Assembly: GCA_026770705.1 (NCBI GenBank)
Contig: JANJGN010000007.1
Location: 109,554,001 to 109,618,000 of the forward strand
Reading direction: 5' to 3'
Origin: Isurus oxyrinchus
Taxonomy: Eukaryota
Length of the DNA: 64,000 nt
Positions within the stretch are counted from its first letter, which is position 1. Each line of letters opens with the position of its first letter. Both the position numbers and the translations under genes were made by a program. This document shows positions 1 through 47,300 of the stretch, one piece after another. The notes under the pieces were generated by a model, which was not told the origin of the DNA, did not search any database, and saw only the letters and a list, made by a program, of their open reading frames with translations.

Positions 1-244
1 CAAAAACATTTTCCAGGTGAAGCAGAGGTTTACGTGTATTAATTTCAATTCGATTTACGTGAACTTATTTTCATTTTTCCTGCTCACACCTTGAGTTTCT
101 CTACACTGGCGAGAACAAATGCAGACTGGGTGACCACTTTGCCGAATAGCTCCACTGCATGTGCAAGAATCACCCTGGTCTTCCAGTGGCTTGCCATTTT
201 AATTTTCACCTTGCTCTGACACTGACATCCCTGTCCTTGGCCTA
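1..244 (+). mobile_element. Decayed Penelope-like element, GIY-YIG endonuclease fragment
   Basis: Reads KNIFQVKQRFTC...LYTGENKCRLGDHFAE*LHCMCKNHPGLPVACHFN, collinear with the intact GIY-YIG ORF at 46106-46852. Interrupted at ~245 by a LINE. Confidence 0.8.
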
Positions 245-249
245 TTTTT

Positions 250-1090
250 TTCATATTCGTACATGGGATGTGGGCATCGCTAGCTAGGCCAGCATTTATT
301 GCCCATCCTTAATTGCCCTTGAGAAGGTGGTGGTGAGCTGCCTACTTGAACCAATGCAGCCCATGTGGTGTAGTTACATTCATGGTACTGTTAGGGAGTG
401 AGTTCCAGGATTTTGACCCCAGTGATAGTGATGAAACGGTGATATAATTCCAAATCAGGATGGTATGTGGCTTAGAAGTGAACTTTCAGGTTATGATGCA
501 TCCATGCATCTGGTGCCCTTGTCCTTCTAGATGCCAGTTCTCGTGGGTTTGGATGGTGCTGTCTTAGGAGCCTTGGTAAGCTCCTGCAGCGCATCTTGTA
601 GATGGTACACACTGCTGCCACTGCGCGTCAGTGTTAGGGGAGGTGGATATTTGTGGAGGTGAGCCAGAAAAGTGGCTGCTTTGCCCAGGATGATGTCAAG
701 CTTCTTGAGCGTTGTTGGAGCTGCACTCATTCAGGCAAGTGGAGAGCATTCCATCACAATCCTGACGTGTGCTTTGTAGATAGACAGCTTTTGGGAGTCA
801 GGAGGTGAGTTACTCGCCACAGGATTCTTAGCCTCCGACCTGCTCTTGTAGCCACAGTATTTATATAGCTAGTCCTGTTCAGTTTCTGGTCAATGGTTAC
901 CCCCAGTATGTTGATAGTGGGGGATTCAGGGATGATTATGCCAGTGAATGTCAAGGGGCAATGATTAGATTCCTTGTTGTTGGAGATGGTCATTCCCTGG
1001 CACTTGTGTGGTTTGAATGTTACGTGCTACCTGCCAGCCCAAGCTGGGATATTGCCCAAGTCTTGCTGCATTTGCACATGGACTGCTTCT
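250..1090 (-). mobile_element. 5'-truncated LINE, family B (CR1/L2-group RT C-terminus and 3' tail)
   Basis: ORFs 754-993 and 527-730 (PTINILGVTIDQKLN..., MSAAPTTLKKLD) match other copies in the window. The tail reads AAGGGCAATTAAGGATGGGCAATAAATGCTGGCC on the minus strand. Confidence 0.85.
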
Positions 1091-1124
1091 TTGCAATCCA
1101 TGTCGAAATGCAATGCCCCAATGT

Positions 1125-1630
1125 CTGCAGTGTACCAGTGAAGCTTAACACAAAATCAAAGAACAGCACATTATCCTTCGATTTGGCATATTACTGATCT
1201 TTGGACTGTGCTGGACAATTTCAGACTTAATCTCTGCCACCTCGCCTATTGTGTCTACTTTTATTTTCAAGTTTCATTTTAACCTCGTTCATCTCTTTTT
1301 TGCTTTGAGATGGCAACTGTTCATTTTTCTGTGAGTTGCACGTCCTCTGGGCCGTTCTTCTGTTTCTGTGCTTGTTCCATTATTGGGCCCTTCGGCTATT
1401 CCCACCAATTGTTTTATTATTTGATGTCTGCCCTATCACAGACCTTCCCGTTTATTTTATTCACACGCCCTCATCTCCCCACCCATGCCCCCCACCCTCA
1501 CCTTAAAGGCATGTCTAATTGTTTCCTCGTTTTGACGAAAGGTTACCACCTGAACCTTTAATTCTGCTTTTTCTCTCCACAGAGAGTGCAAGGCCTGCTG
1601 AGTATTATCAGCGGTTTCTCTTTCTATTAT
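1125..1630 (+). mobile_element. Decayed Penelope-like element 3' part (continuation of 1-244)
   Basis: QCTSEA*HKIKEQHIILRFG matches the GIY-YIG C-terminus (HCSSEAQRKLEEQHLVFRLG). It is followed by a pyrimidine-rich UTR and the decayed terminal motif ...GCCTGCTGAGTATTATCAGC. Confidence 0.7.
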
Positions 1631-1954
1631 AGCAAAGATAATTATTTTCAAATCTACATGGATGGGCAAAGCCGAGCAGTCCTCCAATTGACACTCTTAA
1701 GTTTGATACTTTACTAATAATCCACAGCTACTATGAATTTAGGATAACATAGAGTCATAGAGTTATACAGCACAGAAACAGGCCATTCGGCCTATCGTGT
1801 CTGTGCCGGCCATCAAGATGTGCTGGTGGTGTTTATACTTGTGTATATTTATATCTACTACCCACGTTAACATTTGAACCATCTTGTACATGACTCCAGA
1901 GAGCGTGTTCGCTAAGCAGCGGAGGTTTCTGACCTATCCTTTATTCTTTCATCG

Positions 1955-2149
1955 AAAGTAGAATACTGCGAATGTTGTGAATCCGAAATCCGAACAGAAG
2001 ATCTTGGAAAACATTCAACAGGTCAGGCAGATTCTGAAATGTGGACTACAGAGCTGATGAATGGTCATTGATCCAAAACCTTAAGCTTTATTTTTCTCCC
2101 CGCAGATGCTGCCTGACCTGCTTATAGTTTCCCACCACTTTTGATATTG
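1955..2149. mobile_element. Old ~195-bp fold-back Penelope-terminus insertion
   Basis: Inverted arms (CAGGTCAGGCAG vs ATGCTGCCTGACCTG) and CTGATGA at 2054-2060. Degenerate 14-bp flanking repeat TTATTCTTTCATCG (1941-1954) / TTATCCCTTCAACG (2150-2163). Confidence 0.65.
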
Positions 2150-2544
2150 TTATCCCTTCAACGCTGCAACCAGAAATACCTCTCCACCTCCTAATGTTTT
2201 TCAGTCACTGTTAATATGCTGAGCTACTTTTTCAACAATCTGGAAGCAGGTATTCTGTTTGGCAGTGCCTCTCATATGATATCCCGAAAAATGATACGTG
2301 CCTCTGCCCACTGGCCTCGAGATGGTTGAAGTTGGACTTTTTAATATTGCATTCTTTGCAAACTAGATCCTTGATGGCTTCCAACGTTTATTTCTAATGT
2401 GTAAGACACTGTGACAGGAACAAATTGAATTAGTGACATCCCTAACAAAATTGTAGGTTCTTGACAAATGTCCAAATCAAACAAAATTCTGTCACTGAGG
2501 CATAAATGTACAAATTTGTGCTTTGCTTTTCGAACCCTGAGAAT

Positions 2545-2890
2545 GGGGGACATGGTAGCGCAGTAGTAATGGACCAGCTATTCAGAGGCACCGGCTGATG
2601 CTTTGGGAAGATAGACTCAAATTTCACCCAGGGCAGCTTGTGGAATTTAAATTTAACATAATAATAGTGACCAAACAACTATAATCGATTGTTGTAAAAA
2701 TCAACCGACTTCACTAACTCCCTTTGGGAAGAAAATCTGCCGTCTTACCCAATCTGCCCTACATGTGACTCAGCAACGAGGTTCTTAACTGCCCTCTGAA
2801 ATGGCCAGGAAAGCCACTCAGTTCAAGGGCAATTAGGGATGAGAAGCAAATGTTTGTCTTGCCAATGATGCCCACATCCCATAAAATAAT
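2545..2890 (+). mobile_element. tRNA-headed SINE sharing both ends with LINE family B
   Basis: A-box-like TAGCGCAGTAG at 2556-2566 and decayed B-box at ~2614-2625. The body matches the LINE 5' leader (33667-33812), and the tail from 2824 matches the LINE-B 3' end. Confidence 0.8.
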
Positions 2891-4019
2891 TTTTAAATGT
2901 TATGTTTTAGAAATTTCTCCAGAACATAACAGGTTTCTGAACTGATGTTAACAATGTTAGATGACTGCACCACATGAAAAATTACACTGTTAGGGGTGTA
3001 ACCAATGTCACCGAATTGAAACTGTCCGTTGTCAAATAAATAAAACGTGCAGAGTTTCAGCAAGTCCTGAACTGACCCGAAGAATTTAGTTTCACAGGTG
3101 TCAACATTAGAAATTATTTGCAACTGAATTATTAACTTTCTTTTAAGTATGGATACAATGTTGGGGCGATTAAGCAACATGAGACTCATTCTGCACAGCT
3201 GTATTTCTATTTTAGTCAACAACATGCAGAACTATAATTTGGGAGCCAATGCGATCAGTGTGGCCATGCATGAATAAATTACATCTACTGCAGGGATTTA
3301 ACCGAATGTAACTGTACTGAAATTCTGTGTGGACCAATAAATAAAACACCAAGAAATACATTCAACAAATATTTCTGCGGCTTGCTTTGCGTTTAATGTG
3401 TGATACAAAAATGGAGACAATGAAGATATATAAGCATCTTAAAAAGGATAGATTAAGTAATGAGGGCTGAATCATTGGTGAGATAGAAATGTTACGAAGG
3501 TAAAATGAATTCTGTTAAATCTAAATATCGTGTTACAATTACTCTGAAACATGGTGTTTGGTGATCGCCGTCATTCAACATGCAACGAGGATGCAGCTGA
3601 CAGAGCTAATGTAAAACTTTGAACAATTAGTGCTTTGAACTGAGGAACTGAGCTTTGTTGTTTACTTAGCTCCAAAAAGCTATACGCATGTATCAATATT
3701 TAGCAAAACATCTCGGACATCTAAAATAGACTGGTTAACATCTTGTTTGGTATCTGATATCTTTTCCGAACCCAGCATGGCTAGAGCGCCCAAATGTTCA
3801 AATTTTACACTGCTGCGTTATGTTTGAATATTTAATTATCAAAACACCTACACTATGTTCACTTAAATTTAATCTCGAAGCCAATGAATTGTTATTAAGT
3901 GAGAAAATAGAATGTGAAATAGATTGCAACATAATGATAGGTAAACAGTTGTACATTTACTTGCATCACGCCAACCTTTTAACCTTCGGCATTAAACTAC
4001 TAACCCCGACAGAAACTTG

Positions 4020-4900
4020 AATTAGTCAAGCCTAGGCAGCAGAGATTTAGAAAAAGATAGATGGTGTTTGCCTTACAGAATTCACTGAAGAAATAACAGA
4101 GGGAATAAATCATGAAATATACTGGACGCAATTTATGCGGATTTTCCAAACACATTTATTCGAGTACCACGTACAATATGGGTACATGGCAGGAAGAGCA
4201 ATGCGCTCCAGCGGATACGGGGATGGTTAGAATAGGTGAACGAAAAGTTAAGGATAATAAGACGTTCCTCGGGATAGCAGCATTTGCCGAATCATGTTTT
4301 ACAGGTTCCGTCCTTGGCTGGTTTTATTTACTATGAAAATCAATTATATATTTTCCGGAAATTGAGGCAGGATCTTTAAAATTTGGATATGAAATATAAT
4401 GAGGAGTTGCAAAGCAATCCTCGTGAAATGCTACAGGCAGCGTTGGCAGTTCCAAGAGGGGTAGGATTTTTAGTGGTGCAGAGAAACATAAATTTATCAT
4501 GCAATAAAATTTCAAAGGGGTAGGCTCGGTTTAGTATTTGGCGGCATCGCATAGAGTAACACGGCGTTAAAATTCAGCGGATGCAGGAACTTGCGTGCAA
4601 CTTTGGAAGATTGCAAGATTTATTCTAAATTAAAGGGGCCACCTGAATGGCAAAAAAATGGAACTTTATTATTTGAGAACCCATTCGAGTTGATAGGATT
4701 GATCAGTGACTTGGTAGAAGATTTCAAACCTGTAATGCGTTATGATAAACGAATAGTGACAGAATAATTCTACTGTCCAGGAAAACAACGTTAACATAAT
4801 CGCAAAAAATGAAGGCGGCTGGGGAACAAAATATCTTTCCACACAAAAAAAAGATTTGGATGTTCTTTGCCACAAAACATTGCTGAATCGCAGCCAGGCT
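4020..4900 (+). mobile_element. Highly decayed CR1 reverse-transcriptase remnant
   Basis: TGCCTTACAGAATTCACTGAAGAAATAACAGAG...GCAATTTATGCGGATTTTCCAAAC aligns by eye to the CLTNL.EFFEEVT..DV.YMDF.KAFD region of the CR1 at 42640-42745. Confidence 0.55.
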
Positions 4901-5685
4901 TACTTCGGAAGCGAACTATTTGCTCGGGAAAAAAAGACCAGAACTAAGTGCTCCATGTCGAGGGTAGAGTCCAGACTACCAGAGCCGCCTGGCCTGAACC
5001 TCTACCTCTAGGATCCTAATGCTTGGTAACGCACAGAATCATCAAACCAGAATAGTTACAACAACACGGATTCACTTCTCCTTGTATTATCTTTAAATTT
5101 GGAGTTAAAGGCTTTGTCACTAGAATTGTTGGTCTGCCTTTCTTCCAATAACTAGCTGCACAAAATTCTAAGCCTGTAATTGAAGTGAAATACTCATCAT
5201 TGACATGATCATTTCTAGCTTTCCTTCTCAGATGAGGCAGCCACGCTAAAATAGGACTTAATCCCCAATAAAAAAGATTTTCAACTCTGCCACGATTTTT
5301 TTCCCCACAGCTTCAGTACTGTGTCCCGATTCATTACTTTCGCTGGTCGCAGAAGTCCTTAGAATTGCACTCGCTCTGAAGACAAACCCAAACAAGCACA
5401 ATTAAGGCCGTTCCTTTCACAAAGACTTCCAATTGTCCAGAAGTATCGTTACGAATGGAAATAGATAGTCATACGAAATTTAAGACATTTGCTCCTCCTG
5501 CTCTATCATGTGCAGGCCGTTGTACAGGGGCTTTTACGGACGAGCCCATAGATTGCAACGTCCAAATCAAAAGAATGGTCTGTTCTCGAAGTTAGAATAC
5601 TGTAACGCAACAGGCAAATCAAAGGCCAGGCTCTGCAGTTTTATCCGCAAAAATTAAGAATGCTTGATTGATAAAACCGGTATTT

Positions 5686-5691
5686 TTTATT
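5686..5691 (-). terminator. Candidate polyadenylation signal (AATAAA) for gene A
   Basis: TTTATT on the + strand, ~340 nt downstream of the candidate last coding exon. This motif is common in AT-rich DNA. Confidence 0.25.
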
Positions 5692-6024
5692 ACCTTTATG
5701 AATGATAACTGAATAGTTATCGTATCTATTCATTAAATACTACAGATTCGTCAAGCTACACAAGGAGGGTTTCTTTATTACAGGTAATCAAATAGAATTT
5801 CCACAAACGTTTAAGCAATAACAGACAATTACACTCTACATTCAACGATATAACACTGTCATGCGTTATTCTTTTCCAGCTATTATTTTTGATTTTCCAC
5901 ATTTTTCTTTTGGAGCTTGACAGTTCTGGAGTCGCCAGGATCCTTTTTTTGGTCTGAAAATTGATGTTCGGAAAGATTGTTAATTTGTGGTTTTCGCAGT
6001 TTTTTCTTTGTTTCTGCTCATTCT

Positions 6025-6047
6025 TCAGGAAACAAATCGCAGAGAGC
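6025..6047 (-). CDS. Gene A candidate terminal coding exon (GSLRFVS*)
   Basis: Acceptor ttgtacctcAG at 6048-6049. The phase-1 reading gives a 7-residue tail. An alternative acceptor at 7106-7107 is equally possible. Confidence 0.3.
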
Positions 6048-7482
6048 CTGAGGTACAAGTGACAGCCAAGTTTATATCACTCATTTTCACCCGAATATTA
6101 GTGCTCCTGTGGTGATCTTTGTCTGATACGCTTTTCAGCGCTGCCTGGGGGTGGTGGTGGGGGGTGGGGGGTTGGGGGCGGGGGGGGGGGGGCGGGGTGG
6201 TTGGGGGAGGGGGAGAGAGAGGAGGGGGGCAGGGCTTCTCCTGTTTAAGTATACATTTTTTGAGTTTACATGGCTCTGCTCAGCATATTAACGATTCCAA
6301 CCTGTGCTTTCTACATGGACCCAAAAAGAAATTCTGTTATGTGCCCATTTCATTACCCAACATCATTTTACATACTATTGGGGAAACATTAAATAGAGTG
6401 GCTAGATGTAAAGCACAGAAACCATAATGAATATTTTAATTGCATGCGAACCTGAAGGCCGGTAATTACTAGCCATTATAACTAATACTTACACATGTCA
6501 ATGTTCTTGCTCCGCAACAGTTGATCTTTTACATTTCCAGCTGTTCTAGAACACGGATTCGCTAGGCTTTTTATTTCCAAATATAAGCAAAACTAAAAGA
6601 ATGATTACCTAGTTAGCTTTAAATAAAACTGGCAGTTTTCTTTTCTGCTCTCTATCTCTTTGGACCAGTAACTCGATGAGGAGAGAAATTGGACTTCGGC
6701 GATAGCGCGATGAGGACAAGACCGAATCAGGAACCATTTTTCCACACGCCCGATTTTGTTTTCAGAAAACACCGATCTCCCGGTGTCAAGTGTTTTTCGT
6801 GGGGCAAATGCTCCTAACAATAAATTGTAACGATAAATTGTGCATTACGGCGATTTTTTTCCGCATTTCAATGCGATGCATGAATGAACGTACCGGCTCT
6901 TCACGGCGCTATGGCCCCTTTGACATTTTTATTGCTTGTGAATTACTGAAATTTAGTCATGAGGAGTGTTTAAAGCATTTACTTAGCTGGAATGTCAACT
7001 GTTTCAAAGACATTTCTAGAGTAGGTACAAAATAGAACATGTTTTTCCATTTCAGATTTCGTCGACAGCTTTTGAAATCCCAGCTCCTGTAGAGACCACA
7101 ATGATCTGAAAAAAATTCAAGGCTTCATGCAAACTAATTACGCTCTCACAACAGATCAGTTGGAAACTGTGTGTTAGGACTCACTTCACACTACATTTGG
7201 AGTGTGAAATGTGAAGGGCACACTTCATTCATTGCAACTTTATTGGAAAGTGGAAATTTGAGTTGCAGGTATACAGTTAATCAGATCCATTTGTGATATG
7301 ATTTTACGATAATGACTGTGTTTTGAAGTGAAGAATTTATTGCTGTTTGGAGAAATCAGTGGCCCGTTGGAAACAGAAAATATTGACTTCAATAGAATCC
7401 TCCTTCCCTGGAAACTCTCGCGCCAGCTCCGTCCGCTAGCTGACGTTTTGCATTAAAATCAAACGCTTACATTAGACCTTAC

Positions 7483-7596
7483 CGTTCTTAATATGTATTT
7501 TGCAGTGCGGCCCAGCGATGATCAGGAGCAGTACAAACGCCAATCCACCCACCATGTATCTGAAACACGAGTAGTAAACAGACATACCGACATTAT
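7483..7596 (-). CDS. Gene A exon 4: transmembrane segment with Arg
   Basis: ttttgcAG acceptor, G|GTAAGG donor, 114 nt, phase 1-1. Translates DNVGMSVYYSCFRYMVGGLAFVLLLIIAGPHCKIHIKN. Confidence 0.8.
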
Positions 7597-7729
7597 CTGC
7601 AAAATTAATATGAGCATATGTATAGGTTATACATCATGGTGGGCATTTTGTAAAACGGGGCCGAAGAGCAGTTTATTGGTTAAACTAATAGTGTTTACAG
7701 TAGCCCCACTATATAGTACGGAAATATGT

Positions 7730-8030
7730 TGTTTTTTGCATAAAGGAGATCGACTGATTGCTTTCCCTGGCTGGAAGTCTAGAACTGCGGATCAAAGTCA
7801 CAAGGGTTCGGCCATTTCTTCATTCAAGGGTTCTGAATCTTAGGCATTCTCTACCCCAGAGGGTAATAAATGAAGAGTCCCTGAGTATACTCAAGACTCC
7901 AATCGGTAGACATGGGGATGGGACTGGAAAATAAAGTTGCTGCAGAAAGTCAGGAATGATCTAATTGAATGGCCATAAAGGTTCGGCTAGCCTTATGGCA
8001 AACCCCTGATCCTATTTCGTATGTTTTTTT
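7730..8030 (+). mobile_element. Decayed CR1 3' end in a gene A intron
   Basis: Resembles the CR1 3' end at 49130-49475 (TCTAGAACT...GAATCT..CATTCTCTACCCCAGAGGG...AATTGAATGGC...CCTATTTC.TATG). Confidence 0.6.
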
Positions 8031-8267
8031 TATATTTATATATGCAATCGTAGAATCCGTTAATAAATAAGGCTTAACTGAGAATATTGGTGCGGCGGAT
8101 GATATAACCCGGTTTTACAAAACATCCGGTTGAATTGATCATTTAAATCTAAAGTTTCCCTTGATATTTCCCATGAGATTTCTGTGAACTATCTTCAAAC
8201 TGTACATGATATCTCTTTACGAATTCAATAGTTGTTTACTCTTCTTTTTGGATTCCAGTCGTCGTAC

Positions 8268-8579
8268 CTTGCTGAGGTTTAGAAACAGTGTAGGTGATAA
8301 CAGCTGGAGTCTTGAGAGAAACATGAGATACCGAACATATGTAATTGGCGTAGCTCGGGACAGGTTTCGTCTCAATCAAAGAGCTGGAAACTTCATATAG
8401 CCCCCCGCTGTTCTGCACTTTACTGGTATGTATGCCGAAAGCAGTCTCAATGCCATTTTTATACCAAGTGAGGGTGAAATTGTCTGGATAAAACGCAGCC
8501 GTTTCACAGACTAGAGTCAGAGACGCAGATGAATTCCATTCAGATATCCTGGAGACAATCCTCAGTGGGGTTGGGGCAG
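8268..8579 (-). CDS. Gene A exon 3: Ig C1-set domain
   Basis: tctctgtcccgcAG acceptor, G|GTACGA donor, 312 nt open, phase 1-1. Translates AAPTPLRIVSRISEWNSSASLTLVCETAAFYPDNFTLTWYKNGIETAFGIHTSKVQNSGGLYEVSSSLIETKPVPSYANYICSVSHVSLKTPAVITYTVSKPQQ, with C1 hallmarks C-x4-FYP, W and Y-x-C-x-V-x-H. Confidence 0.92.
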
Positions 8580-9546
8580 CTGCGGGACAGAGAATGAACA
8601 GCGTCGAGTTACTGTGCGCTATTGGGAGGAATTAAATATGTTTCTGATTTATGTTCAGTCCATTTTCTTATAAACTTCCCTTTCGAAAGCACAGCTCCTG
8701 TCCTTTTAATGTTACACATATTCTATACACACCTCATCTATATCTCTCATAAAGATCGACATCTCGGCAATTTTATCTGTGCTATTAATGCCAACGCTTT
8801 GAATTATTCGGCAGAAAAGTCGGAATGATTTGGTTGTCATAGTCCAAAGAATTAAGCAAAAATATCCTGGGAGCAAGTTGGCTAGCTGACTCCTTACGTG
8901 TTTGATACGCACAGACAGTGACGAACAATAGACACAATCTTGATAAAATGAAGCGCTTAATCGGTACGGGAATAACTCACAGCTGAAGCATAACAACTGG
9001 TAAAATGCATCAGATTCAGTTGACCCTCAGTAGGTTTCAGCAACACAGACACTTTTTAGACGTTAGTGAGGCGAATTGGGTGCTTGGAACTCCAATTTGT
9101 TGAATGAATCACCTTCTCAACAATTAGCTGCACACTGGCATTCAAATCTGCAACGCGATCATTATGCGAGATTTAATTTCAGGAATATTAAACCGCCAGG
9201 GCAGCGATAGGGGCAGAGATTGGATCAAGAATGAGCAAGAACAATATACATATTGGGAGACACGTATTAACATAAAGGGTTTTCATTCAGTTATATTCTT
9301 GGAAGCTGTTCCGACTTCCTAATATCATTAATTTGGTGTGTAGATTGCCATTATAGTTGCAGTCTAATTCATTAATATTGATTCATTTGGCAGTACTCTA
9401 CGTGTGACATTGCAGGTCTAAATACCAATTCTATATAGGGAACATTATCGCGTGTAGAAGTAGGCGTGTTTACACTGGCCAAAACGGTGCGATAAAACAG
9501 TATGAAACGATCCCGGTGTGTTATGTTCAACGTATTTGAAACTTAC

Positions 9547-9864
9547 CGTGGACAATTAGATGTGATCCTGTCCCATTTCCTCGAATTACTCCCCGATGGT
9601 TCACGGAGCAGTGATAGATTCCAGAGTCTTGGAATGTGGCGTCCAGTAACTGAAAGAAACCGCTCACTTTACTTGCCATACCAAACGTTCTCTTGTCTGG
9701 GCTTTTGTGCAGGTATTCATTCACACCATGTTTCCACCATAAGACCCGTACCCAGGCTTGGTCTTGAAGAATGGGGAATACACAGTAGAATGTGATGTTC
9801 CCACCTCTGAGCACCGTCGCTTTTTGTGGTGCTTGAGACACACTGATCGAAGTTTGGCCCTCAG
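9547..9864 (-). CDS. Gene A exon 2: Ig V-set domain with germline J-like G-strand (NKp30/SIRP/VJC1-like)
   Basis: tttttatgacAG acceptor, G|GTAAGT donor, 318 nt, phase 1-1. Contains the B-strand Cys (TFYC), C-strand WW, D-x-G-x-Y-x-C (DSGIYHC) and the diglycine bulge GNGTG. Confidence 0.93.
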
Positions 9865-10035
9865 CTGTCATAAAAATATAGTCAAATACAGGTTAAAAGC
9901 ATTAGCTAAGGCATGAAGGTGGAAGGGGGAAAACATAATCTGGATAGAGGAAATACGGTTCGTTAAATTAATATGAAAACTATTTCGGAGGCAGTTTATG
10001 AATTAGAGTAACTGGGCAAATGAATAAACTGGTAC

Positions 10036-10090
10036 CTGCGTGAAAACTCCCTCGGAAGATCAGGCACAGAAAAACCATATTCGTTGTCAT
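10036..10090 (-). CDS. Gene A exon 1: leader peptide
   Basis: ATG at 10090, MTTNMVFLCLIFRGSFHA, then GCA G|GTACCA phase-1 donor. A 171-nt intron leads to the V exon, the typical IgSF leader layout. Confidence 0.75.
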
Positions 10091-13649: not shown

Positions 13650-14975
13650 TGACCATCAGCAATGCAATGGAAAGTGTCAATGACGGTGCTATCAAGCAGC
13701 ATTTACACGGCATTAATCTGCTCATAGGAATTCTGTTTTGGTTCCACCAGGGCCATTAGCCTCCTAACCTCAATGAAGCCTTGTCCCAAGCATTGACAAA
13801 AACAATCTGAACACAAGACATCAAGGCAAGCATTTGACTGAGTGTGGCATCAGGGATCCTTCACAAAATTGAAGTCAATAGGAATCATGTGGGGAAATGT
13901 ACCATTGGTTGGAGTAAGGCCTGGCACAAAGGAATGTGGTTGGCGTTGTTGGACCCTGTCATCTCAGCTCCAGCACATCGCTGTAGGAGGTCCTCATGGT
14001 AGTATCCTGGGTCTTCTTCAGCTGCTTCATCAATGCCCTTCCCTTCATCATATAGTTAGAAATCGGGGTGTTTGCTGCTGATTTCACAGTATTCAGTCAC
14101 ATTCACGGTTCCACAGATACTGAAATATTTCGTAGCCATATGCAGTGGCACCTGGACAACATTCAGGCTTGGGCGCATAATTGTCAAGTAACATTCGTGC
14201 CACACTAGTCTCAGGCAATGACAGTCTCCAACAAGATACTATCTAACCATCTTTGCCCGATATTCAATGGCATTACCATCGCTGAAACCCCACCATCAAA
14301 ATCCTGGGGGCTACCATTGACAAGAAACTTAATTGGACCAGCCATATACATACTACGACTACAAGACCAGGTCAGGAGTTGAGAATTCTACAGTGAATAA
14401 CTCATCCCCTGACAGCACAAAGCCTGTCCACCATCTACAGGGCACAAGTCAGGAGTGTGATGGATAACTCTCCATTTGCCTGAATGAGTGTGGCTCCAGC
14501 AAAGGAATATGGTTGTGGTTGTTCATCACCAACCAGGATGAAGTATCCCGCTTTATCAACAATCCATCCACCACCTCAAACATTTATTCCCCTCCAAACT
14601 GACGGACAATGGCATGAGTGTGTACCAGCTGCAAGATGCTCTATAGCAACTCGCAGCAGCCACTTCAACAGCACTTTCAAAACCCACTGTCTCTACCATC
14701 TCGAAATACAAAGACAGCAGATGCATGGGAAGATCACCACCTGCAATTCCCCTCCAAGCTACACAGCATCATGACTTGGAACTACAGTGCCATTCCTTCA
14801 CTGTCTTCAATCAAACTCCTGGAACTCGCTTCCAATCATCACTGTGGGTGTACCTGCACCAGATGGACTGCAGCAGTTTAATATGGTGGCTCACCATCAC
14901 CTTCTCAAGGTCAATTAGGAATTGGCGACAATTGCTAGTCTTGCCAGTGATGCTCATATCCCAAGGAAGAATAAA
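13650..14975 (+). mobile_element. 5'-truncated LINE family B
   Basis: RT-region remnants collinear with 35700-37110 and 59900-61030. Tail at ~14905-14975. Confidence 0.8.
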
Positions 14976-24102: not shown

Positions 24103-24990
24103 CGGGCGGGATTTTGTGCAGGCAACGAGGTTCAGGGAGCCATCTTTAAATCCAGTCTCCAGTCTTAATACATTGCTGGTTGCGCAAAATGAAGTCTGCA
24201 GATGGGATGCAGTAGAAGGTAAATTGTGGAGGTATGGCTGGAGTGTGTGGAGATGGGCGCATCCCTAAAGGTGCTTCTGCAAGGTGGTGGTGGCTGTGGT
24301 GGGGGTGGGGGTGGGTGGCGGGGTGGGGGGGGGGGGGGGGGGTGGTGGGTGAGGGGAGAGAGAGAGGGACTATTCCCAGAGGGCTGAAGGAGCAAACCGG
24401 CCAGCTTCCTAAAGAAGGTTGGGCTGGAGGTGGTTGATGAAAAGAGCAGCTTCAGGTCATAGCACAGACATGTGCCAGAAGCATGTCAATGATCTAGTAA
24501 GGGCTGACAAGGTAAGTGTCATGCATGATGGCCAAGCGGCGGATCCGCATGTATATGATCATCATGTAAACGATGTGAACAGCCCATGCGCGAGGACTCA
24601 AGAACCACCAATTAGAGCATCAAGGCAGACAGGGTAGAGTCATACCAGAGCACCATGACCAATCATTGGCACTCATTGCAATGCCAAGCTGAGACGAACA
24701 CATGCAACATGCCTCCCAGTGCTGCAATGATGGACATTGAGAGTGCCACAGTCTTATAAGCTTTGCATGAGCAGAGGAGTTGATCGCAGTGTTGCTGCAG
24801 AAAAGGGCTCAAAAATGCAAGATGGAGGTGAATGGGTGGAGGATTGCCCATCTTCACAACAATAAGGCAGATGGGGGAGTAGGAGTCTTCAGAGTGGCAA
24901 CTGGTCAGGCTATCACAAAGATTAAACCAGGTTTGGTGCCCCTGACGAGTGAGAGAAACAATAGGTGTGGGTGGAATCCGTCGCATTTGT
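24103..24990 (+). mobile_element. Harbinger remnant: terminal repeat plus Myb/SANT-like gene fragment
   Basis: GGGCGGGATTTT terminus at 24103. CQKHVNDLVRADK followed by a GTAAGT donor parallels the Myb-like gene at 55390-56340. Confidence 0.55.
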
Positions 24991-28319: not shown

Positions 28320-28612
28320 CTGCTATGAAAAGTAAGGCTGGCGTTGGCTGGGACCAGAAGAGAGACCGTGAGATACCAGACAGGTATAAACAGTCCCAGC
28401 TTGGGCAGGCTGGTTCTACAGCAAATTGCTGGAGACTTCATAAATTCCATCGGAGCTCTGTTGTTTAATGGTACGCGTGGCGATCAGAATTTCATCACTC
28501 TTATACTAAGACATTAAAATTTTCCCCGGATAAAAGTCAGCCGTTTTGCACAGGAGCAATAGAGAAGTAGACGAACCATCTTCAGGTGTTGAGGAGAACA
28601 TCTTTAATGGAG
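28320..28612 (-). pseudogene. Gene B Ig C1-set exon, disabled
   Basis: APLKMFSSTPEDGSSTSLLLLCKTADFYPGKILMS*YKSDEILIATRTIKQQSSDGIYEVSSNLL*NQPAQAGTVYTCLVSH, then a +1 frameshift (VSLLVPANAS). Stops at 28506-28508 and 28416-28418. AG|GTAAAT donor. Confidence 0.88.
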
Positions 28613-29159
28613 CTGAGGGTAGGAGATATTTAACGTAACATTATTTCCACTTACATTCGATTCCGTATGCATCTTCAAGGTAGCTTTCAACATAATTCAA
28701 ATTTAATTTATTTTCTTTGTATTTTGTTTTATAAATTAATACCTTTCAAACATTTCCTTTATATGCTCCATTATTTAACATCAAAACGCGTACGTCTCTT
28801 ACATATATGCATCAATTACTTGAAAAAACTGTATGTGTAAAAACACGACAAGAATGTGAAGCGCCCAGTGCCTCTCAACAAGAACATAAATCTTTTCTAT
28901 CACCGAGGACAGGAAAACCATTCACATTTCAGGTCATAGTTCCCCAGCTTTTCTTTCGGCGTTTTTTTCCTTTGATTGTTGCATAATCGAGGTATTCATC
29001 AAAAAGAAACGTTTCCGGAAATTCACGCTGTCATAAATTTTGAGACAGGTGGAAAAAAGTATGCTAAACACTCTCACCGTTTTACAAAATCTACAGGCAA
29101 ATTTCATTTAGACAAATCTTAAAATCCCAGAGCACAGAAGGAGTTATATGAATATACAC

Positions 29160-29560
29160 ACGAAGGTAACAACAAGGAGCAGGAGTAGGCCGTTCAGCCC
29201 CTCGAACCTGCTACCACATTCAATAAGTTCATGGCTGATCTAATAGTAACCTCAAATGCATCCCACCTACCCCCGATAACCTATCACCCCCCTGCTTACC
29301 AGGAACCTATCCACCTCTGTCTTAAAAATATTCAAAGACTCTGCTTCCACTATCTTTTCAGGAAGAGATTTCCAAAGACTCAGGAACCTCTGAGTGAAAA
29401 AAAATCGCGCCACTTCTGCTTTAAATGGGTGACCCTTTATTTTTAAACACTGACCCCTAGTTCTAGGTTCTCCCACAAGAGGAACATCCTCTCCACATCC
29501 ACCCTGTCAAGATCCAGGATCTTATATGTTTCAATCAAGTTGCCTCTTACTCTTCTAAAC
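29160..29560 (-). mobile_element. CR1 3' end in the gene B V-C1 intron
   Basis: ORF 29267-29476 (RTRGQCLKIKGHPFKAEVARFFFTQR) and a CR1 tail. Confidence 0.85.
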
Positions 29561-29971
29561 TAATTAAATATAACTTACGCTTCAATATCTCTCATCGTAT
29601 TTTTTAATCTGCAGCCCAATCGCTTCAATAAAGCGACTGTTAGCGATTATTCAAAATAATTTAAAATAGTGCAAACATTTTAAAAAGCAGAAATGTACCT
29701 GAGGTTCGCATTAATTCAGGATATTGATGATCCAAAATATTCTTGCTTTTCTCCAAACATATTTCCAATTATTTACAAAATTATCCCATTTAAAATCACC
29801 TTTTATATAATTAAATGCGAATCAGTCTCATTTCACTTTCGCTCTCCACTACAATCACAATTACAAAGTCTGACCCATAACCGCTGTCACTCCTCATCTC
29901 GGCATTGATGCTATACAACGTGTTGTGAGGCAGTCCTGTTTCATTCATCCCCTCCCTACAATCCCACTTAC

Positions 29972-30289
29972 CATGCACAAAGAGTGGGGACCCGGTCCCG
30001 TTTCCAAACACTATGTTATGAATTGTTACCTTGCAGAGATAGATTCCAGCATCATCCACACTTACATCGACGAGCTGGAAAGAGCCGCTCTCCTTTTTTG
30101 TGCGAAACTCTTTTCTCCAGTTTGATCCTGGTCGCAGCAGTGTGCTGTCGCCACCTTTCTACCAGTAAACATTTACTTCTGGGATATTTTGGAAGAGAGG
30201 AAAAGTGCAATAAAAGGTAACGGCTCGGCCTTTGATGGCGGTCACACGTTCAGGGACTTGCTGCACTTGAACAGATGCATCTAGAACAG
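29972..30289 (-). pseudogene. Gene B Ig VJ-type V exon with premature stop
   Basis: cttccAG acceptor, G|GTAAGT donor, 318 nt as in gene A. Translates AVLDASVQVQQVPERVTAIKGRAVTFYCTFPLFQNIPEVNVYW*KGG...DAGIYLCKVTIHNIVFGNGTGSPLFVH. TAG at 30159-30161. Confidence 0.92.
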
Positions 30290-30499
30290 CTGGAAGCCAA
30301 TTAATAAAACTGCGGTTATTCAGCGCACAAGAGTGTTAAATAACGTTAGGGGAAGGGGAAAAAACAGTGGTTATACATACAGAAAGAACACAGTTAAATC
30401 GGTTCAGTAAAACACAGTCTTATTGCACAGGTTCAAGCCTCTACATGCTATTTTTATATATTATTAATAAGCGGAGAAGAATATACAATAATAACAAAC

Positions 30500-30539
30500 C
30501 TGCATTGATAACCAACTGAGCGGTAATGCTGAAGCACAT
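30500..30539 (-). pseudogene. Gene B candidate leader exon
   Basis: MCFSITAQLVINA, then GCA G|GTTTGT phase-1 donor. 210-nt intron, same position as the gene A leader. Confidence 0.5.
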
Positions 30540-32441: not shown

Positions 32442-35400
32442 GGGGCATTAGCATAATGGTAATGATGGTGGATTTAATAATACATAGAGCTCAGGGAACA
32501 AGGATTCAAATCCTAACATGGCAGCTGATGGGATTTAAATTCGATTAATACATATGCAGTTGAAAGCTAGTCCCCATAATTGTGACTGTTTGACTTCTTT
32601 CCTTTTTTCATGGGATGTGGGCATCGCTAGCTAGGCCAACATTTATTGCCCGTCAATAATTGCCCTTCAAAACGTGATGGTGAGCTGCCTTCTTGAACTA
32701 CTGCAGTTCATATGGTGTAAGTACATTCACAGTGCTGTTAGGAAGGGAGTTCCAGGATTCTAACCCAGTGACTGTGAAAGAATGGTGATATTGTTCCAAG
32801 TCAGTGTGATGTGTAGCTTGGAGGAGACCTAGCATGTGGTGGTCTTCCCATGCATCTGCTGCTCTTGTCCTTCTAGATGGGAGAGGTCGTGGGTTTGGAC
32901 ACTGCTGTCAAAGGAACCTTTGTGAATTGTTGCAGCGATCCTTGTAGATAGCACACACTGCTGCTACTGTTTGGCAGTAGTGGAGGGAGTGAATGTTGAA
33001 GATGGTGTATGCAGTGCCAGTTAAGCAGGCTGCTTTGTCTTGGATTGTGTCAAGGTTCGTGAATGTTGTTGATGCTGCACTCATCCAGGCAAATGGATAG
33101 TATTCCATCACACTCCAGACTTGTGCATGGTAGATGGCAGAAAGGCTTTGGGGAGTCAGGAGGTGAGTTACTCACCACAGAATTCCAAGCCTCTGACCTG
33201 CTCTTGCAGCTGCAGTATTTATATAGCTAGTCCAGTTCAATTTCTGGTCAATGGTAACTCCCAGGATGTTGACGGTGTGGTATTCAGCAATGGCAATGCC
33301 ATTGAATGTCAGCGGGAGATGGTTGGATTCTCTCTTGAAAAGATGGTCATTGCCTGACACTTGTGTGTCACGATGTTACTTGCCACTTATCAGCTCAAGC
33401 CTGAATGTTGTCCAGGTCCTGATGCTGGTGGAACAAGTCATACCCAATAATGGTGATGACTGAGGCTGAGACATTGGTTGTAACGCACTGATTCAATATC
33501 TGAGAAGGCACAAATGGTGCTGAACAGTGTGCAATCATCAGCAAACATCCCCACTTCTGATCTTATGATGGAGAAAAGATTATTGATGAAGGAGCTGAAG
33601 GTGGTTGGGCCTAAGACACTACCATGAAGAGCTCCTGCAATGATGTCCTGGGACTTAGATGATTATGGTAAACGCCCATCTGGTTCACCAATGCCCTTTA
33701 AGAAATTAATTCCGCCACTATGACCTGTTCTGGCCTACATATGACTCCAGACCCATAGCAATGCAGTTGACTTTTTACAGTACCCTGAAATAGCCTAGAA
33801 GGCCACCCAGTTGTGCCAAAACTACTGCAGTCAAAAAGGGATAAAAACAGATGGACTACCCAGCACCAGCCTAGGCACAGGAAATGACAATTGTATGCCT
33901 TTCCCCGTTGACCCTGCAAAGTCCTTCTTACTAACATCTGTATGCAAGTACCAAAACTGGGAGAGCTGTCCCACAGGCTAGTCAAGCAATGGCCTGACAA
34001 AGTCATACTGCTAAAATCATACCTTACAGCCAAGGTCCCAGACTAAGCCATCACTCTTCCTGGGTATGACTTGTCCCACCAGCAGGAAAGACACACCAGA
34101 AGCGGTGACACAATGGTGTACAGTTGGGAGGGAATTGCCATGGGAGTACTCAACAATGAGGAGTGGAAGTCATTATGGCTGGGAGGAATTTACTACTAAT
34201 GTTTCTTTATGGCAAAAAAACTTGTTCATCAAGCAACATTACACTTTCAATTCCAAATTCTTAATGGTGTGGCGGAGTGATAGCAGAGAAAGAAAGAAAA
34301 GGAAGCAAATCCTGCACTCTGGATCTCACTACCTCATGGGATTTCCTGCCCCTTGTTCCTAAAGATGTGTGGGTTCATAACTGGATTGTTCAGTCACATG
34401 AAGGCCCATGTTAGAAAATCGGACCCTAAGTAGACATCACCCTCAAATCAAGGGAGAGTCGATGAAGACGACAGCTCAAAATTAAGTCTGGGTTACATGA
34501 AATCTTATGACATACAGGCAAACAAGGGCAATGAAACCTCCTGCTGATTACAATCTACTGCCCTCCCTTAACAGATGAATCTGTACTCCTTCATATTGAA
34601 CACTATTAGAACACATATATAGAACACATTAGAAGCAGCACTACAGGTACCACGAATACAAAATGTACTCCATGTGAGGGACTTCAATGTCCATCATCAA
34701 GAGTGGACGTGTCCTGCAGGACATATATACCAGACTGGGCCTGCAGTAGCTTGTGACGGAACCAATAAAAGGAAAAAAACCTACTTGCCTTACCCTGACC
34801 AAGTTACCAATTATAAATGTATCTGTCCGTGACAGTATTGGTTGGAGTAGCCACAGACAATTCTTGTGGACCCATTTTCACACTGAAGATACCATCCATT
34901 ATGTCCTGTGGCACAACTACCATTCTAAATGAGATAGGTTCAGAATGGATCTAACAGTTCAAAACTGGGCATCCAGGAGGTGCTGAGGCATCAGGAGTAG
35001 CAAAATCATATTCAATCACAATCTCTAACCTCATGGACTGTCATTCTATCTTTCGGATAAATCCAGAGAATTAGCCCTAATTCAATGAGGAATGCAGTAG
35101 CACATGCTAGGAGCAGCAGCCAGAATACCAGACATTGAGGTGCCAACCTGGCGAAGCTACAACACAGGACGGCATGCATGCTAAACAGTGGAGCAGCATG
35201 CGATAGACAGAGCAAAGTAACCTGACAACTAATGGAACAGATCAAAGATCTGTGGATCTGTCACATCCAGTTGTGAATTATGGTGGCTAATTAAACAACT
35301 AAATGGAGACGGAGGCTCCATAAATATCCCCATCCTCAATGATGGGGGATCTCAGTGCATCAGTGCAAAAGACAAAGCTGAATTTGCAGCCATCTTCAGC

Positions 35401-45922: not shown

Positions 45923-45925
45923 AAT

Positions 45926-46852: not shown

Positions 46853-47260
46853 GCTCCCTCCCCCATCCCCACCCCCTTTCTGTTTCCCCCTTTTTTTCCC
46901 CCTTTTTTCCCTATAAATTTTATAGATTTTTCTTTTCCCACCTATTTCCATTATTTTTAAATATTTTAAAATCTTTTATGCTCCCCCCACCCCCACTAGA
47001 GCTGTACCTTGAGTGCCCTACCAGTCATTCTTAATTAGCACATTCGTTTAGATAATATCACCAACTTTAATTTTAACACCTATGTGTTCTTTTGTACCAT
47101 TGTCACTGACATCTTTTGATGATCTGCTTCTATCACTGCTTGTTTGTCTACACAAGCACCTCTGTCTCTCTCTCTCTCTCCGCCCCCCCTCCCCCCCCCC
47201 CCCCCACACACACACACCTTAAACCAGCTTATATTTCAACTCTTTCTTGGACTCGAAATC

Positions 47261-47300
47261 AAGTTCTGTCGAAGGGTCATGAGGACTCGAAACGTCAACT
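47261..47300 (+). ncRNA. Minimal type-I hammerhead-ribozyme-like motif (variant core) in the Penelope terminus
   Basis: AGTT-CTGTCGA-A-GGGTC(ATGAG)GACTC-GAAAC-GTC-AACT: helix I AGTT/AACT, helix II GGGTC/GACTC, palindromic ACGT in place of helix III. Mirror copy at 44566-44605. Confidence 0.6.

What the first reader, a model, noticed from the sequence alone, without database searches (positions are those of the whole stretch)
7483..10090. Intact non-rearranging VJ-C1-TM receptor with antigen-receptor-like architecture
Seen: four exons with canonical GT-AG sites, all phase 1 and all open, encoding leader, a V domain that already contains its J-like G-x-G strand in one exon, a C1-set domain and a TM. 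No CACAGTG-type recombination signal was seen beside the V exon. Established: C1-set domains are restricted to a small group (Ig, TCR, MHC, beta-2-microglobulin, tapasin, SIRP and relatives), and single-exon VJ domains occur in NKp30 and SIRP. A germline VJ+C1 membrane protein is the architecture proposed for the pre-RAG ancestor of TCR/Ig chains. Inference: this is a member of a little-characterised innate VJ-C1 receptor family in cartilaginous fish. The ORF track shows only fragments of it.
Basis: partly seen in the sequence, partly recalled or inferred. Interest (0 to 1): 0.82.

Follow-up and report, generated by a model that had tools for sequence, protein, structure and literature searches.

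The report
Shark activating-type VJ-C1 receptor gene
This is an intact shark gene for a cell-surface immune receptor with an antibody-like outer part and an "activating-type" membrane anchor, one more copy of a large, computer-annotated but poorly studied receptor family of sharks, rays and chimaeras.

Summary
On the minus strand there are four open, phase-1, GT-AG-bounded exons: leader 10090-10036, V 9864-9547, C1 8579-8268 and TM 7596-7483. No recombination signal lies nearby.

The V exon matches annotated chondrichthyan proteins at E 1e-45 (76% to Mustelus asterias, 67% to Scyliorhinus canicula). Pfam and AlphaFold/Foldseek confirm a compact VJ-type V domain (VNAR/CD79b/NCAM-like, no C'' strand) and a C1-set domain.

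The gene belongs to a multigene family found in sharks, rays and chimaeras. NCBI names its members inconsistently: SIRP-alpha-like, SIRP-beta-1-like, tapasin-related-like, lambda-like.

The family has two classes:
- long-tailed members with ITIM-like motifs;
- short-tailed members with an Arg at the start of the TM.

This gene is of the Arg/short-tail class. Its ectodomain is closest to an ITIM-type protein and its TM to a short-tailed one, so it is most likely the activating partner in a paired-receptor family.

Still open:
- Its 3' end is unsettled: read-through to a stop at 7472, or a further exon.
- Splicing is not shown.
- Its relation to the published shark NCR3 (NKp30) family, to PRARP and to SIRP is unresolved; the V domain shares a GxGxG(T/S)xLxV strand with frog and human NKp30.

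This scan had already found the same family elsewhere in this genome (s1-865376, s1-868561). It is a new member of a known kind, of moderate interest.

The parts
10036..10090 (-). Exon 1: start codon and signal-peptide (leader) exon, 18 codons plus 1 base, phase 1.
   Evidence: Sequence and translation. The leader resembles those of homologues P0148-P0151. The donor is GT at 10035-10034.
9547..9864 (-). Exon 2: the last leader residue plus a compact VJ-type V domain. Key residues are Cys27, Trp42, Asp79, Gly81, Tyr83 and Cys85. The G strand reads G-N-G-T-G-S-H-L-I-V, with an N-G-T sequon at the position of the J Phe/Trp.
   Evidence: Translation. Pfam V-set 5.5e-6. HMMER E 1.3e-45 to P0001. 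AlphaFold pLDDT 92.3. Foldseek and VIA matches to VNAR, CD79b, NCAM Ig1, TCR V and NKp30.
8268..8579 (-). Exon 3: C1-set constant-type Ig domain, with the motifs LVCETAAFYP ... WYKNG ... YICSVSH.
   Evidence: Translation. Pfam C1-set 2.3e-10. AlphaFold pLDDT 90.0. Foldseek top hits are all MHC class II beta-2 domains. 72-76% identical to P0001 and P0149.
7483..7596 (-). Exon 4: membrane-proximal Cys, a TM helix that begins with Arg (F-R-Y-M-V-G-G-L-A-F...), and a short basic tail with a juxtamembrane Cys. It ends at a consensus phase-1 donor.
   Evidence: Translation. 77% identical to the C-terminus of the short-tailed S. canicula protein P0002 and 37% or less to ITIM-type members. The Arg column is tabulated.
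7472..7482 (-). Possible read-through end of the coding sequence (Gly-Lys-Val-stop) if the donor at 7483 is not used.
   Evidence: ORF 7472..7585 and sequence. P0002 and P0152 also end within a few residues of the TM. This is inferred, not shown.
7336..7341 (-). AATAAA, a candidate polyadenylation signal 131 bases downstream of the read-through stop.
   Evidence: The hexamer is common in AT-rich DNA, so this is only suggestive.
29973..30275 (-). V exon of a tandem paralogue, about 42% identical to the intact gene's V exon. It is a pseudogene, with an in-frame TAG at 30161-30159 in place of the conserved Trp.
   Evidence: tblastn E 2.6e-23 and sequence.
28368..28610 (-). C1 exon of the same pseudogene, with in-frame TAG stops at 28508-28506 and 28418-28416.
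   Evidence: tblastn E 1.9e-15 and sequence.

Best explanation
An intact gene for a type I membrane glycoprotein of about 266-269 residues. The order is signal peptide, a compact non-rearranging VJ-type V domain, one C1-set domain, a short stalk with a Cys, a TM helix that opens with an arginine, and a cytoplasmic tail of about 12 residues.

It is one copy in a tandem, birth-and-death multigene family of cartilaginous fish. The family comes in two classes: long-tailed members with ITIM-like motifs, and Arg-TM members with short tails.

Most likely it works as the activating half of a paired-receptor system. The V domain binds a still unknown ligand. Because the tail cannot signal, the TM arginine would recruit an ITAM-bearing adaptor with an acidic TM residue (of the FcR-gamma, CD3-zeta or DAP12 kind). 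Its ITIM-bearing relatives with near-identical ectodomains would deliver the opposing signal.

Shown: the gene structure, the domain types, family membership, and the statistical link between the Arg and short tails. Inferred: expression, adaptor pairing, ligand binding, and the exact 3' end.
For: - Gene structure and open frames. The residues made across the junctions are conserved in homologues.
- Domain types.
- Family: 136 HMMER hits, 72 of them below 1e-10. The strong, full-length matches that I could name are all cartilaginous fish, from sharks, rays and a chimaera. The other named hits are weak ones: reptile multi-V proteins, Xenopus NCR3 and a Polypterus protein.
- Placement: separate V and C1 trees put the window exons with P0001 (Mustelus, ITIM tail) and P0002 (Scyliorhinus, short tail).
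- Mosaic pattern typical of paired receptors: V is 76% and C1 72% identical to ITIM-type P0001, but the TM is 77% identical to short-tailed P0002 and 37% or less to ITIM-type members.
- Arg column: 19 members carry Arg there, with a median tail of 31 residues, and 4 of them have an ITIM-like motif. The other 59 members have a median tail of 102 residues, and 39 of them have such a motif. Fisher p = 0.001, not corrected for relatedness.
- No RSS.
Against: - No spliced transcript was seen. In four small RNA-guessed runs, kept only as contigs, the sole matches lay inside the V exon. They were X1 at 9584-9747 with 2 differences, and an X10 contig that departs from the window at 9666, which may come from a paralogue.
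- The 3' end is unsettled. No downstream cytoplasmic exon was found in 7.5 kb, and a consensus donor ends exon 4.
- The neighbouring copy is dead, and this scan reports another cluster of the family in this genome as mostly decayed. An intact but silent copy is therefore possible.
- No adaptor, ligand or expressing cell type is known.
- The tail and ITIM counts rest on automatic gene models, some of them truncated.
Confidence: 0.62

Rival explanations
1. It is a member of the shark NCR3 (NKp30) family, which has been described in nurse shark as eight divergent, MHC-linked, non-rearranging VJ genes. It would then work like NKp30: an activating receptor that binds B7H6-like ligands and signals through CD3-zeta or FcR-gamma by way of a TM arginine. 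The C1 domain would be an addition that tetrapod NKp30 has lost or never had.
For: - Outside cartilaginous fish, the V exon's HMMER hits that I could name include Xenopus NCR3 (P0119, E 9e-5).
- They also include a Polypterus protein (P0122) whose 90% cluster also holds a gene model named PRC2A, i.e. PRRC2A. From my own knowledge, PRRC2A neighbours NCR3 in the human MHC class III region.
- P0199 is a true NKp30 relative: its best solved hit is human NKp30, E 7e-10.
- Window V against P0199: 28% identity over the whole domain, E 2e-8. Profile-profile probability 97%, E 1e-11.
- The G strand G-x-G-x-G-(T/S)-x-L-x-V is shared by the shark family, frog NCR3 and human NKp30.
- Family members without a C1 domain (V-TM) exist (P0008, P0024, P0057, P0072).
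- An Arg at the TM start with a short tail is what NKp30 has (my own knowledge).
Against: - Human NKp30 is not among the best 60 solved-structure hits, either of the V exon or of the V-only family profile. VNAR, TCR V and CD79b score better.
- In the fold searches NKp30 is tied with many other V domains.
- The shark V is about 12-15 residues shorter, with 24 gap positions.
- Any two V domains give a high hhalign probability.
- The paper on the shark NCR3 family and its sequences (MT914154-MT914161, cited in PMC12227049) were not available to me, so no direct comparison was made.
- MHC findings of this scan in this genome all lie on other assembly pieces, which is weak evidence.
Confidence: 0.3
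2. It is a true orthologue or co-orthologue of tetrapod SIRP genes, as the automatic names say: a SIRP-beta-like activating receptor that pairs with DAP12 and binds a CD47-like ligand.
For: - The family profile aligns colinearly with SIRP-alpha V plus its first C1 domain (62 bits) and again with its third domain (43 bits); overall E 3.8e-29. SIRP-gamma scores 1e-25.
- The C1 exon hits SIRP-alpha domain 2 at 3.7e-10.
- The atlas lists an SHPS1 cluster among the nearest C1 clusters.
- Paired inhibitory and activating members, as in SIRP-alpha and SIRP-beta.
Against: - SIRPs have V-C1-C1; this gene has one C1.
- An IgA1/lambda chain (1.2e-29) and UrIg2 (5.5e-29) score about the same overall. A plain light chain scores less overall (E 4.2e-21), but its single V-C1 stretch reaches 78 bits against 62 for the V-C1 stretch of SIRP-alpha.
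- SIRP domain 1 is absent from the best 60 hits of the V-only profile and of the V exon.
- No bony-vertebrate SIRP appeared among the named HMMER hits.
Confidence: 0.12
3. It is an intact-looking but silent or decaying copy: a young pseudogene in a birth-and-death cluster, with no present function.
For: - The tandem paralogue 18 kb away carries three in-frame stops.
- No spliced RNA was seen.
- No protein of this gene was found in the public collections searched.
Against: - All four exons are open, with consensus splice sites.
- Every invariant family residue is kept (Q10, P12, C27, W42, D79, G81, C85 in V; the C1 Cys/Trp/His set).
- The leader, the junction residues, the TM Arg and the juxtamembrane Cys are conserved.
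- Short contigs from two RNA-guessed runs lie on the V exon and none on its introns apart from one repeat.
Confidence: 0.15
4. It is a germline-joined immunoglobulin light chain or TCR-like gene, that is, a member of a rearranging antigen-receptor clade that was joined in the germline, as happens in sharks.
For: - Some family members are automatically named 'immunoglobulin lambda-1 light chain-like'.
- A light chain gives the best single V-C1 stretch in the solved-structure search (78 bits).
- TCR V domains align through the G strand.
Against: - A TM exon follows the C1 exon directly, and relatives carry ITIM tails.
- The V domain has only 57 residues between its cysteines and lacks C''.
- There are no RSS remnants.
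- The J Phe/Trp is replaced by Asn.
- The family is uniform in this across sharks, rays and a chimaera.
Confidence: 0.03

Closest known systems
Unnamed chondrichthyan VJ-C1 receptor family. RefSeq models are named 'tyrosine-protein phosphatase non-receptor type substrate 1-like', 'signal-regulatory protein beta-1-like' or 'tapasin-related protein-like'. Examples: XP_078066559 from Mustelus asterias and XP_038661932 from Scyliorhinus canicula.
   Same: Same exon plan and the same leader-V-C1-TM order. Identity is 65-76% in V, 67-76% in C1 and 77% in TM (to XP_038661932). The G strand GNGTGSxLxV, the C1 motifs and the TM Arg with a short tail are the same as in P0002, P0152 and P0190.
   Different: No identical or near-identical protein was found, so this copy seems absent from the collections searched. 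Its ectodomain is nearest to an ITIM-type protein, while its TM is of the short-tail type.
NKp30 / NCR3, including the nurse shark NCR3 family (Kinlein et al. 2021, Immunogenetics 73:333; not readable here).
   Same: A non-rearranging single-exon VJ domain. A G-x-G-x-G-(T/S)-x-L-x-V G strand. An Arg at the TM start with a short tail. Multigene in sharks. Frog NCR3 is reached by the V exon's HMMER search.
   Different: Tetrapod NKp30 has no C1 domain and a longer V with C'-C''. Human NKp30 is not a top sequence hit. MHC linkage could not be examined. I could not learn whether the published shark NCR3 genes include C1-bearing members.
SIRP-alpha/beta/gamma (mammalian paired receptors).
   Same: A VJ-type V followed by a C1-set domain, with paired ITIM and basic-TM members. 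The family profile matches SIRP-alpha at E 3.8e-29.
   Different: SIRPs have two C1 domains and a full-size V. The similarity is no greater than to Ig chains or UrIg2. The V domain is not specifically SIRP-like.
UrIg / UrIg2 (non-rearranging shark VJ-C1 genes; PMC12227049, PDB 9dmx).
   Same: A non-rearranging VJ exon with a split leader, followed by C1-type domains, in cartilaginous fish. The C1 exon hits UrIg2 domains.
   Different: UrIg has three C domains and is secreted, and UrIg2 has nine or more (PMC12227049). This gene has one C1 and a TM. The UrIg2 match comes from summed C domains only. UrIg V domains are VH-like, whereas this V is VNAR/I-set-like.
TCR chains.
   Same: The same overall chain plan: V(J), one C1-set domain, a connecting peptide with a Cys, a TM with a basic residue and a very short tail. 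TCR V domains align through the G strand.
   Different: There is no rearrangement and no RSS. The V is compact. The C1 model is closest to MHC class II beta-2 and not to TCR C. ITIM-bearing siblings exist.
PRARP (chicken non-rearranging VJ IgSF pair; Fu et al. 2019, J Immunol 202:1992, cited in PMC10751288; not readable here).
   Same: [quoted passage not shown]
   Different: No comparison was possible: I had no PRARP sequence, and no bird hit came up among the proteins I could name.

Membership tests
Chondrichthyan VJ-C1 paired-receptor family (unnamed; annotated as 'SIRP-like' or 'tapasin-related-like') | V domain homologous over its full length, with the family's invariant residues and the GNGTGSxLxV G strand. 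| tested here: met
   E 1.3e-45 and 76% identity to P0001. Invariant Q10, P12, C27, W42, D79, G81 and C85 are all present.
Chondrichthyan VJ-C1 paired-receptor family (unnamed; annotated as 'SIRP-like' or 'tapasin-related-like') | One C1-set domain directly after the V domain. | tested here: met
   Pfam C1-set 2.3e-10. 72-76% identity to family C1 domains. The fold matches MHC class II beta-2.
Chondrichthyan VJ-C1 paired-receptor family (unnamed; annotated as 'SIRP-like' or 'tapasin-related-like') | Groups inside the family in trees of both domains. | tested here: met
   V and C1 were treated separately. The window exons group with P0001 and P0002, with SH-aLRT 80-93. The trees are quick ones and contain no outgroup.
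Activating (Arg-TM, short-tail) class of that family | An Arg at the conserved column at the start of the TM, and a tail without an ITIM. | tested here: met
   The window has F-R-Y-M-V-G-G in register with P0002, P0152, P0190 and P0154. Tail length depends on the unsettled 3' end.
SIRP (SIRP-alpha/beta/gamma) | Three Ig domains, V-C1-C1. | tested here: not met
   There is only one C1 exon between the V and TM exons.
SIRP (SIRP-alpha/beta/gamma) | Sequence closer to SIRP than to other V-C1 proteins. | tested here: not met
   SIRP-alpha 3.8e-29, an IgA1/lambda chain 1.2e-29 and UrIg2 5.5e-29. A light chain gives the best single stretch. SIRP domain 1 is not in the top 60 of the V-only profile.
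NKp30 / NCR3 | A non-rearranging VJ-type V domain with the GxGxG(T/S)xLxV G strand. | tested here: met
NKp30 / NCR3 | Architecture of V, stalk and TM, with no constant domain. | tested here: not met
   This gene has a C1 exon. Some relatives in other species lack one.
NKp30 / NCR3 | NKp30 as the best named match of the V domain. | tested here: inconclusive
   NKp30 is not among the best 60 solved-structure hits. However, frog NCR3 is among the few non-chondrichthyan HMMER hits that I could name. Most of the 136 hits could not be named.
NKp30 / NCR3 | Linkage to the MHC class III region. | not testable with these tools
UrIg / UrIg2 | A VJ domain followed by three or more C1-type domains. | tested here: not met
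   There is one C1 exon. The definition is taken from PMC12227049.
Rearranging or germline-joined Ig/TCR | An RSS or its remnant at the V/J boundary, and a full-size V domain. | tested here: not met
   No heptamer is present, and RSS-like matches are at background level. There are 57 residues between the V cysteines and no C'' strand.
PRARP | Sequence relationship to chicken PRARP-A and PRARP-B. | not tested
   No PRARP sequence or paper was available.

The most novel reading that the evidence does not exclude
The family is the closest living membrane-bound relative of the chain that the RAG transposon split. It has a germline VJ-C1 chain with a stalk Cys, a basic TM residue and almost no tail, which is the TCR-chain plan. 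It would pair through its V and C1 domains and signal through CD3-like adaptors. It would link NKp30-type VJ domains to C1 domains in a single gene, something tetrapods no longer show.
Probability: 0.08. Interest if true: 0.85.

Novelty: new member of a known kind. Interest (0 to 1): 0.42.

Why it matters
Paired activating and inhibitory Ig-type receptors are known from mammals (SIRP, KIR, LILR) and teleosts (NITR). In cartilaginous fish, the oldest lineage with Ig, TCR and MHC, they have hardly been studied.

This family is large, old (sharks, rays and a chimaera) and fast-evolving. It combines a J-bearing V domain with a C1 domain, which is the combination that models of antigen-receptor origin require.

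The practical gains are modest:
- a cleaner annotation, since the present automatic names are misleading;
- a candidate activating receptor for shark NK-like or myeloid cells;
- a defined test of whether shark NCR3-type V domains once carried a C1 domain.

This single gene adds a copy and the activating-class assignment. It does not add a new principle.

Tried and rejected
- Downstream cytoplasmic exons. I searched by tblastx against the paralogue's flank, by ITIM/ITAM motif scan of 1-7483, and by tblastn with 130-residue tails of all homologues. Only repeats and chance matches came up.
- Transcript evidence. One look-up of runs and one laying of reads were allowed. No run is on record as RNA, all are kept as contigs, there were no joints, and only V-exon pieces matched.
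- Phylogeny with SIRP, NKp30, PRARP, TCR, IgL and UrIg. This was not possible, because the tools gave me no protein ids for those references except frog NCR3. Solved-structure hits come without retrievable sequences, and I did not type sequences from memory.
- Word searches. Two word-index searches with family members and one with a family profile returned only chondrichthyan proteins. The profile search scored only the 8000 candidates that shared most words, so this says nothing about bony-vertebrate relatives.
- Literature. The shark NCR3 paper (PMC8273117), the UrIg paper (PMC10530332), the 'primordial immune complex' paper (PMC6761025), the B7H6/NKp30 paper (PMC3709836), PMC4594805 and the PRARP paper are not held. 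Searches for PRARP and NS344823 led nowhere.
- Spliced model. All searches, folds and trees were done exon by exon, by reference.
- Order of searches. I used the single exhaustive protein search early. The word search only sees proteins of 0.55-1.75 times the query's length, which makes it blind to full-length relatives of a single exon.
- Rejected readings: germline-joined IgL/TCR, UrIg, and chance ORFs.
Full report
**Observation.**
- Exon 1 (10090-10036) opens with ATG and encodes an 18-residue hydrophobic leader.
- Exon 2 (9864-9547) encodes 105 residues of a V-type domain.
- Exon 3 (8579-8268) encodes 103 residues of a constant-type domain.
- Exon 4 (7596-7483) encodes a stalk, a TM helix and a short basic tail.

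Each acceptor is an AG after a pyrimidine tract. The donors are GTACC, GTAAGT, GTACGA and GTAAGG. All junctions are phase 1.

The three split codons would give Ala, Ala and Asp. These are the residues that annotated homologues carry at the same places: IVH-A-APTPL in P0001, KQ-D-YVGMS in P0002, and ...TA-A-D in the leader of P0148. Everything below was done exon by exon.

**Domains.** Pfam gives V-set (E 5.5e-6, just over its cut-off) and C1-set (E 2.3e-10). The language-model atlas agrees, with V-set clusters for exon 2 and C1-set clusters for exon 3.

AlphaFold models built on family alignments are confident: pLDDT 92.3 for V and 90.0 for C1. The C1 model matches only C1-set domains, and MHC class II beta-2 domains come first.

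The V model is tied (Z 13.4-14.4) between shark VNAR, NCAM Ig1, CD79b, TCR V-alpha and antibody V domains, and NKp30 is also among the Foldseek matches. It has 57 residues between its two cysteines and no C'' strand. It is therefore a compact, VNAR-like V domain and not a full-size antigen-receptor V.

Its G strand reads G95-N-G97-T-G99-S-H-L-I-V. G97 and G99 are nearly invariant in the family. This is the J motif FGxGTxLxV with Asn in place of Phe/Trp, which creates an N-G-T sequon.

There is no CACAGTG anywhere near the gene, and RSS-like heptamer-nonamer pairs occur only at background density and on the other strand.

**Relatives.** An exhaustive HMMER search with the V exon found 136 proteins, 72 of them below 1e-10. 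The strong, full-length matches that I could name all come from cartilaginous fish:
- sharks (Mustelus, Scyliorhinus, Heterodontus, Heptranchias, Chiloscyllium, Hemiscyllium, Stegostoma);
- rays and skates (Hypanus, Hemitrygon, Mobula, Narcine, Amblyraja, Leucoraja);
- the chimaera Callorhinchus.

Their RefSeq names are inconsistent: SIRP-alpha-like, SIRP-beta-1-like, tapasin-related-like, CD276 homolog, class II beta-like, lambda light chain-like, B7H6-like. That is the mark of a family with no curated name. No protein closer than 76% (V) came up, so this copy seems not to be in the collections searched.

In separate quick trees of V and C1, the window's exons sit with P0001 (Mustelus) and P0002 (S. 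canicula), inside a shark subgroup with Heptranchias and Heterodontus proteins.

A second copy lies in the window (V at 30275-29973, C1 at 28610-28368). It is dead, with three in-frame TAG codons. First-stage notes report further copies in the flanking windows and a decayed cluster 320 kb away. I did not check those.

**Two classes.** I aligned the region after the C1 domain for all fetched members. It shows a column at the start of the TM that is either Arg or a small or hydrophobic residue.
- Arg members (n = 19) have a median tail of 31 residues, and 4 carry an ITIM-like motif.
- The others (n = 59) have a median tail of 102 residues, and 39 carry one to several such motifs.
- Fisher p = 0.001, not corrected for relatedness, and based on automatic gene models.

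The window gene has the Arg (F-R-Y-M-V-G-G-L-A-F). Its TM exon is 77% identical to short-tailed P0002 but 37% or less to ITIM-type members. Its V (76%) and C1 (72%) are closest to ITIM-type P0001. Similar ectodomains on opposite signalling modules are the signature of paired receptors.

From established knowledge of NKp30, SIRP-beta, KIR-S and NITR, a basic TM residue with a short tail means signalling through an ITAM adaptor that has an acidic TM residue. That step is inferred here, not shown.

**The 3' end.** Exon 4 ends at a consensus donor, in the same phase and place as in long-tailed relatives. No cytoplasmic exon could be found in the 7.5 kb downstream.

Read-through adds Gly-Lys-Val and a stop at 7472, and an AATAAA lies 131 bases further on. 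Short-tailed homologues P0002 and P0152 also end within a few residues of the TM. I favour a terminal exon, but this is not settled.

**Expression.** Only small runs guessed to be RNA, kept as contigs, were on offer. Two have short contigs inside the V exon. One of those leaves the window's sequence at 9666 and may come from a paralogue. There were no joints. Splicing is therefore unproven, and contigs of such small runs cannot show absence.

**Which known family?**
- SIRP: the family profile matches SIRP-alpha well (E 3.8e-29, colinear over V-C1). Overall, an IgA1/lambda chain and UrIg2 score the same, and a light chain gives the best single V-C1 stretch. SIRPs also have two C1 domains, and SIRP domain 1 is not among the top hits of the V-only profile.
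- UrIg/UrIg2 have three or more C domains.
- A germline-joined IgL/TCR reading fails on the TM exon, the compact V domain and the missing RSS.
- NKp30/NCR3 is the most interesting lead. Among the few non-chondrichthyan hits I could name are Xenopus NCR3 (P0119) and a Polypterus protein whose 90% cluster also holds a gene model named PRC2A, i.e. PRRC2A. From my own knowledge, PRRC2A is a neighbour of NCR3 in the human MHC.

For NCR3, the frog protein is a true NKp30 relative. It aligns with the window's V over the whole domain (28% identity, E 2e-8). The shark family, frog NCR3 and human NKp30 share a G-x-G-x-G-(T/S)-x-L-x-V strand. Some family members lack the C1 domain, as NKp30 does.

Against NCR3, human NKp30 is not a top sequence hit, the fold matches are ties, and the other named non-chondrichthyan hits are reptile multi-V proteins. 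A nurse shark 'NCR3 family' of eight divergent genes has been published (cited in PMC12227049), but neither the paper nor its sequences were available. This family may be, or may overlap with, that one. PRARP could not be tested at all.

**Verdict.** This is a real, intact gene, a new copy of a known kind: a paired Ig-superfamily receptor with VJ-C1 architecture. It belongs to a family that is annotated by machine in many species, that this scan has already met in the same genome, and that appears not to have been studied under a stable name.

The antigen-receptor-like plan is genuine as anatomy: VJ, C1, stalk Cys, basic TM residue and short tail. It is not evidence of a special relationship to the pre-RAG ancestor.

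Noticed in passing
window 28368-30538 (minus strand): A tandem paralogue of the receptor gene that is a pseudogene. Its V exon has TAG at 30161-30159 in place of the second Trp of the WW(K) motif. Its C1 exon has TAG at 28508-28506 (at the Trp of the TWYK motif) and at 28418-28416. A leader-like ATG exon seems to lie at about 30538-30499. No TM exon was found.
   Followed up: partly
window 9666 (V exon), run X10: A contig of an RNA-guessed run matches the 5' half of the V exon. It then continues for 255 letters that are unlike the window. This suggests a transcribed or assembled close paralogue that shares part of the V exon, or an assembly chimera.
   Followed up: no
window 7826-7863 (intron 3): A 38-base stretch covered by many short, deep contigs at about 92% identity in all four runs laid. 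It is a piece of an abundant repeat family.
   Followed up: no
window 44489-47414: A near-perfect palindrome with mirrored 248-residue ORFs (44996-45742 minus, 46106-46852 plus). One arm's ORF was scanned and gives a weak GIY-YIG hit just under Pfam's cut-off (E 1.4e-4, 22.5 bits against 22.6), which would fit a Penelope-like element, as a first-stage note also says.
   Followed up: partly
window 245-1088, with copies at about 14137-14973, 32609-33425, 36270-37116, 60439-61037 and 62457-63530: An interspersed repeat of about 800 bases, 70-80% identical between copies, present at least seven times in the window on both strands. A reverse-transcriptase fragment lies at 42848-43399.
   Followed up: partly
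window 6119-6427 and 24276-24385: G-rich low-complexity tracts that read as poly-Gly or poly-Pro ORFs. They occur downstream of both receptor copies.
   Followed up: no
proteins P0154, P0041, P0100, P0066, P0087, P0160 (other species): A subgroup of the Arg-TM members also carries a conserved Asp-His at the inner end of the TM (…IIVDH…). That puts both a basic and an acidic residue in one helix. The window gene does not have it.
   Followed up: no
proteins P0021, P0043, P0052, P0074, P0098, P0099, P0109 (turtles, lizards, a gecko): Reptile proteins with two to six tandem VJ-type domains, named pIgR-like, titin-like or FcRL5-like, are the best non-chondrichthyan matches of the shark V exon. They may be an unrecognised expansion of NKp30-type domains.
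   Followed up: no
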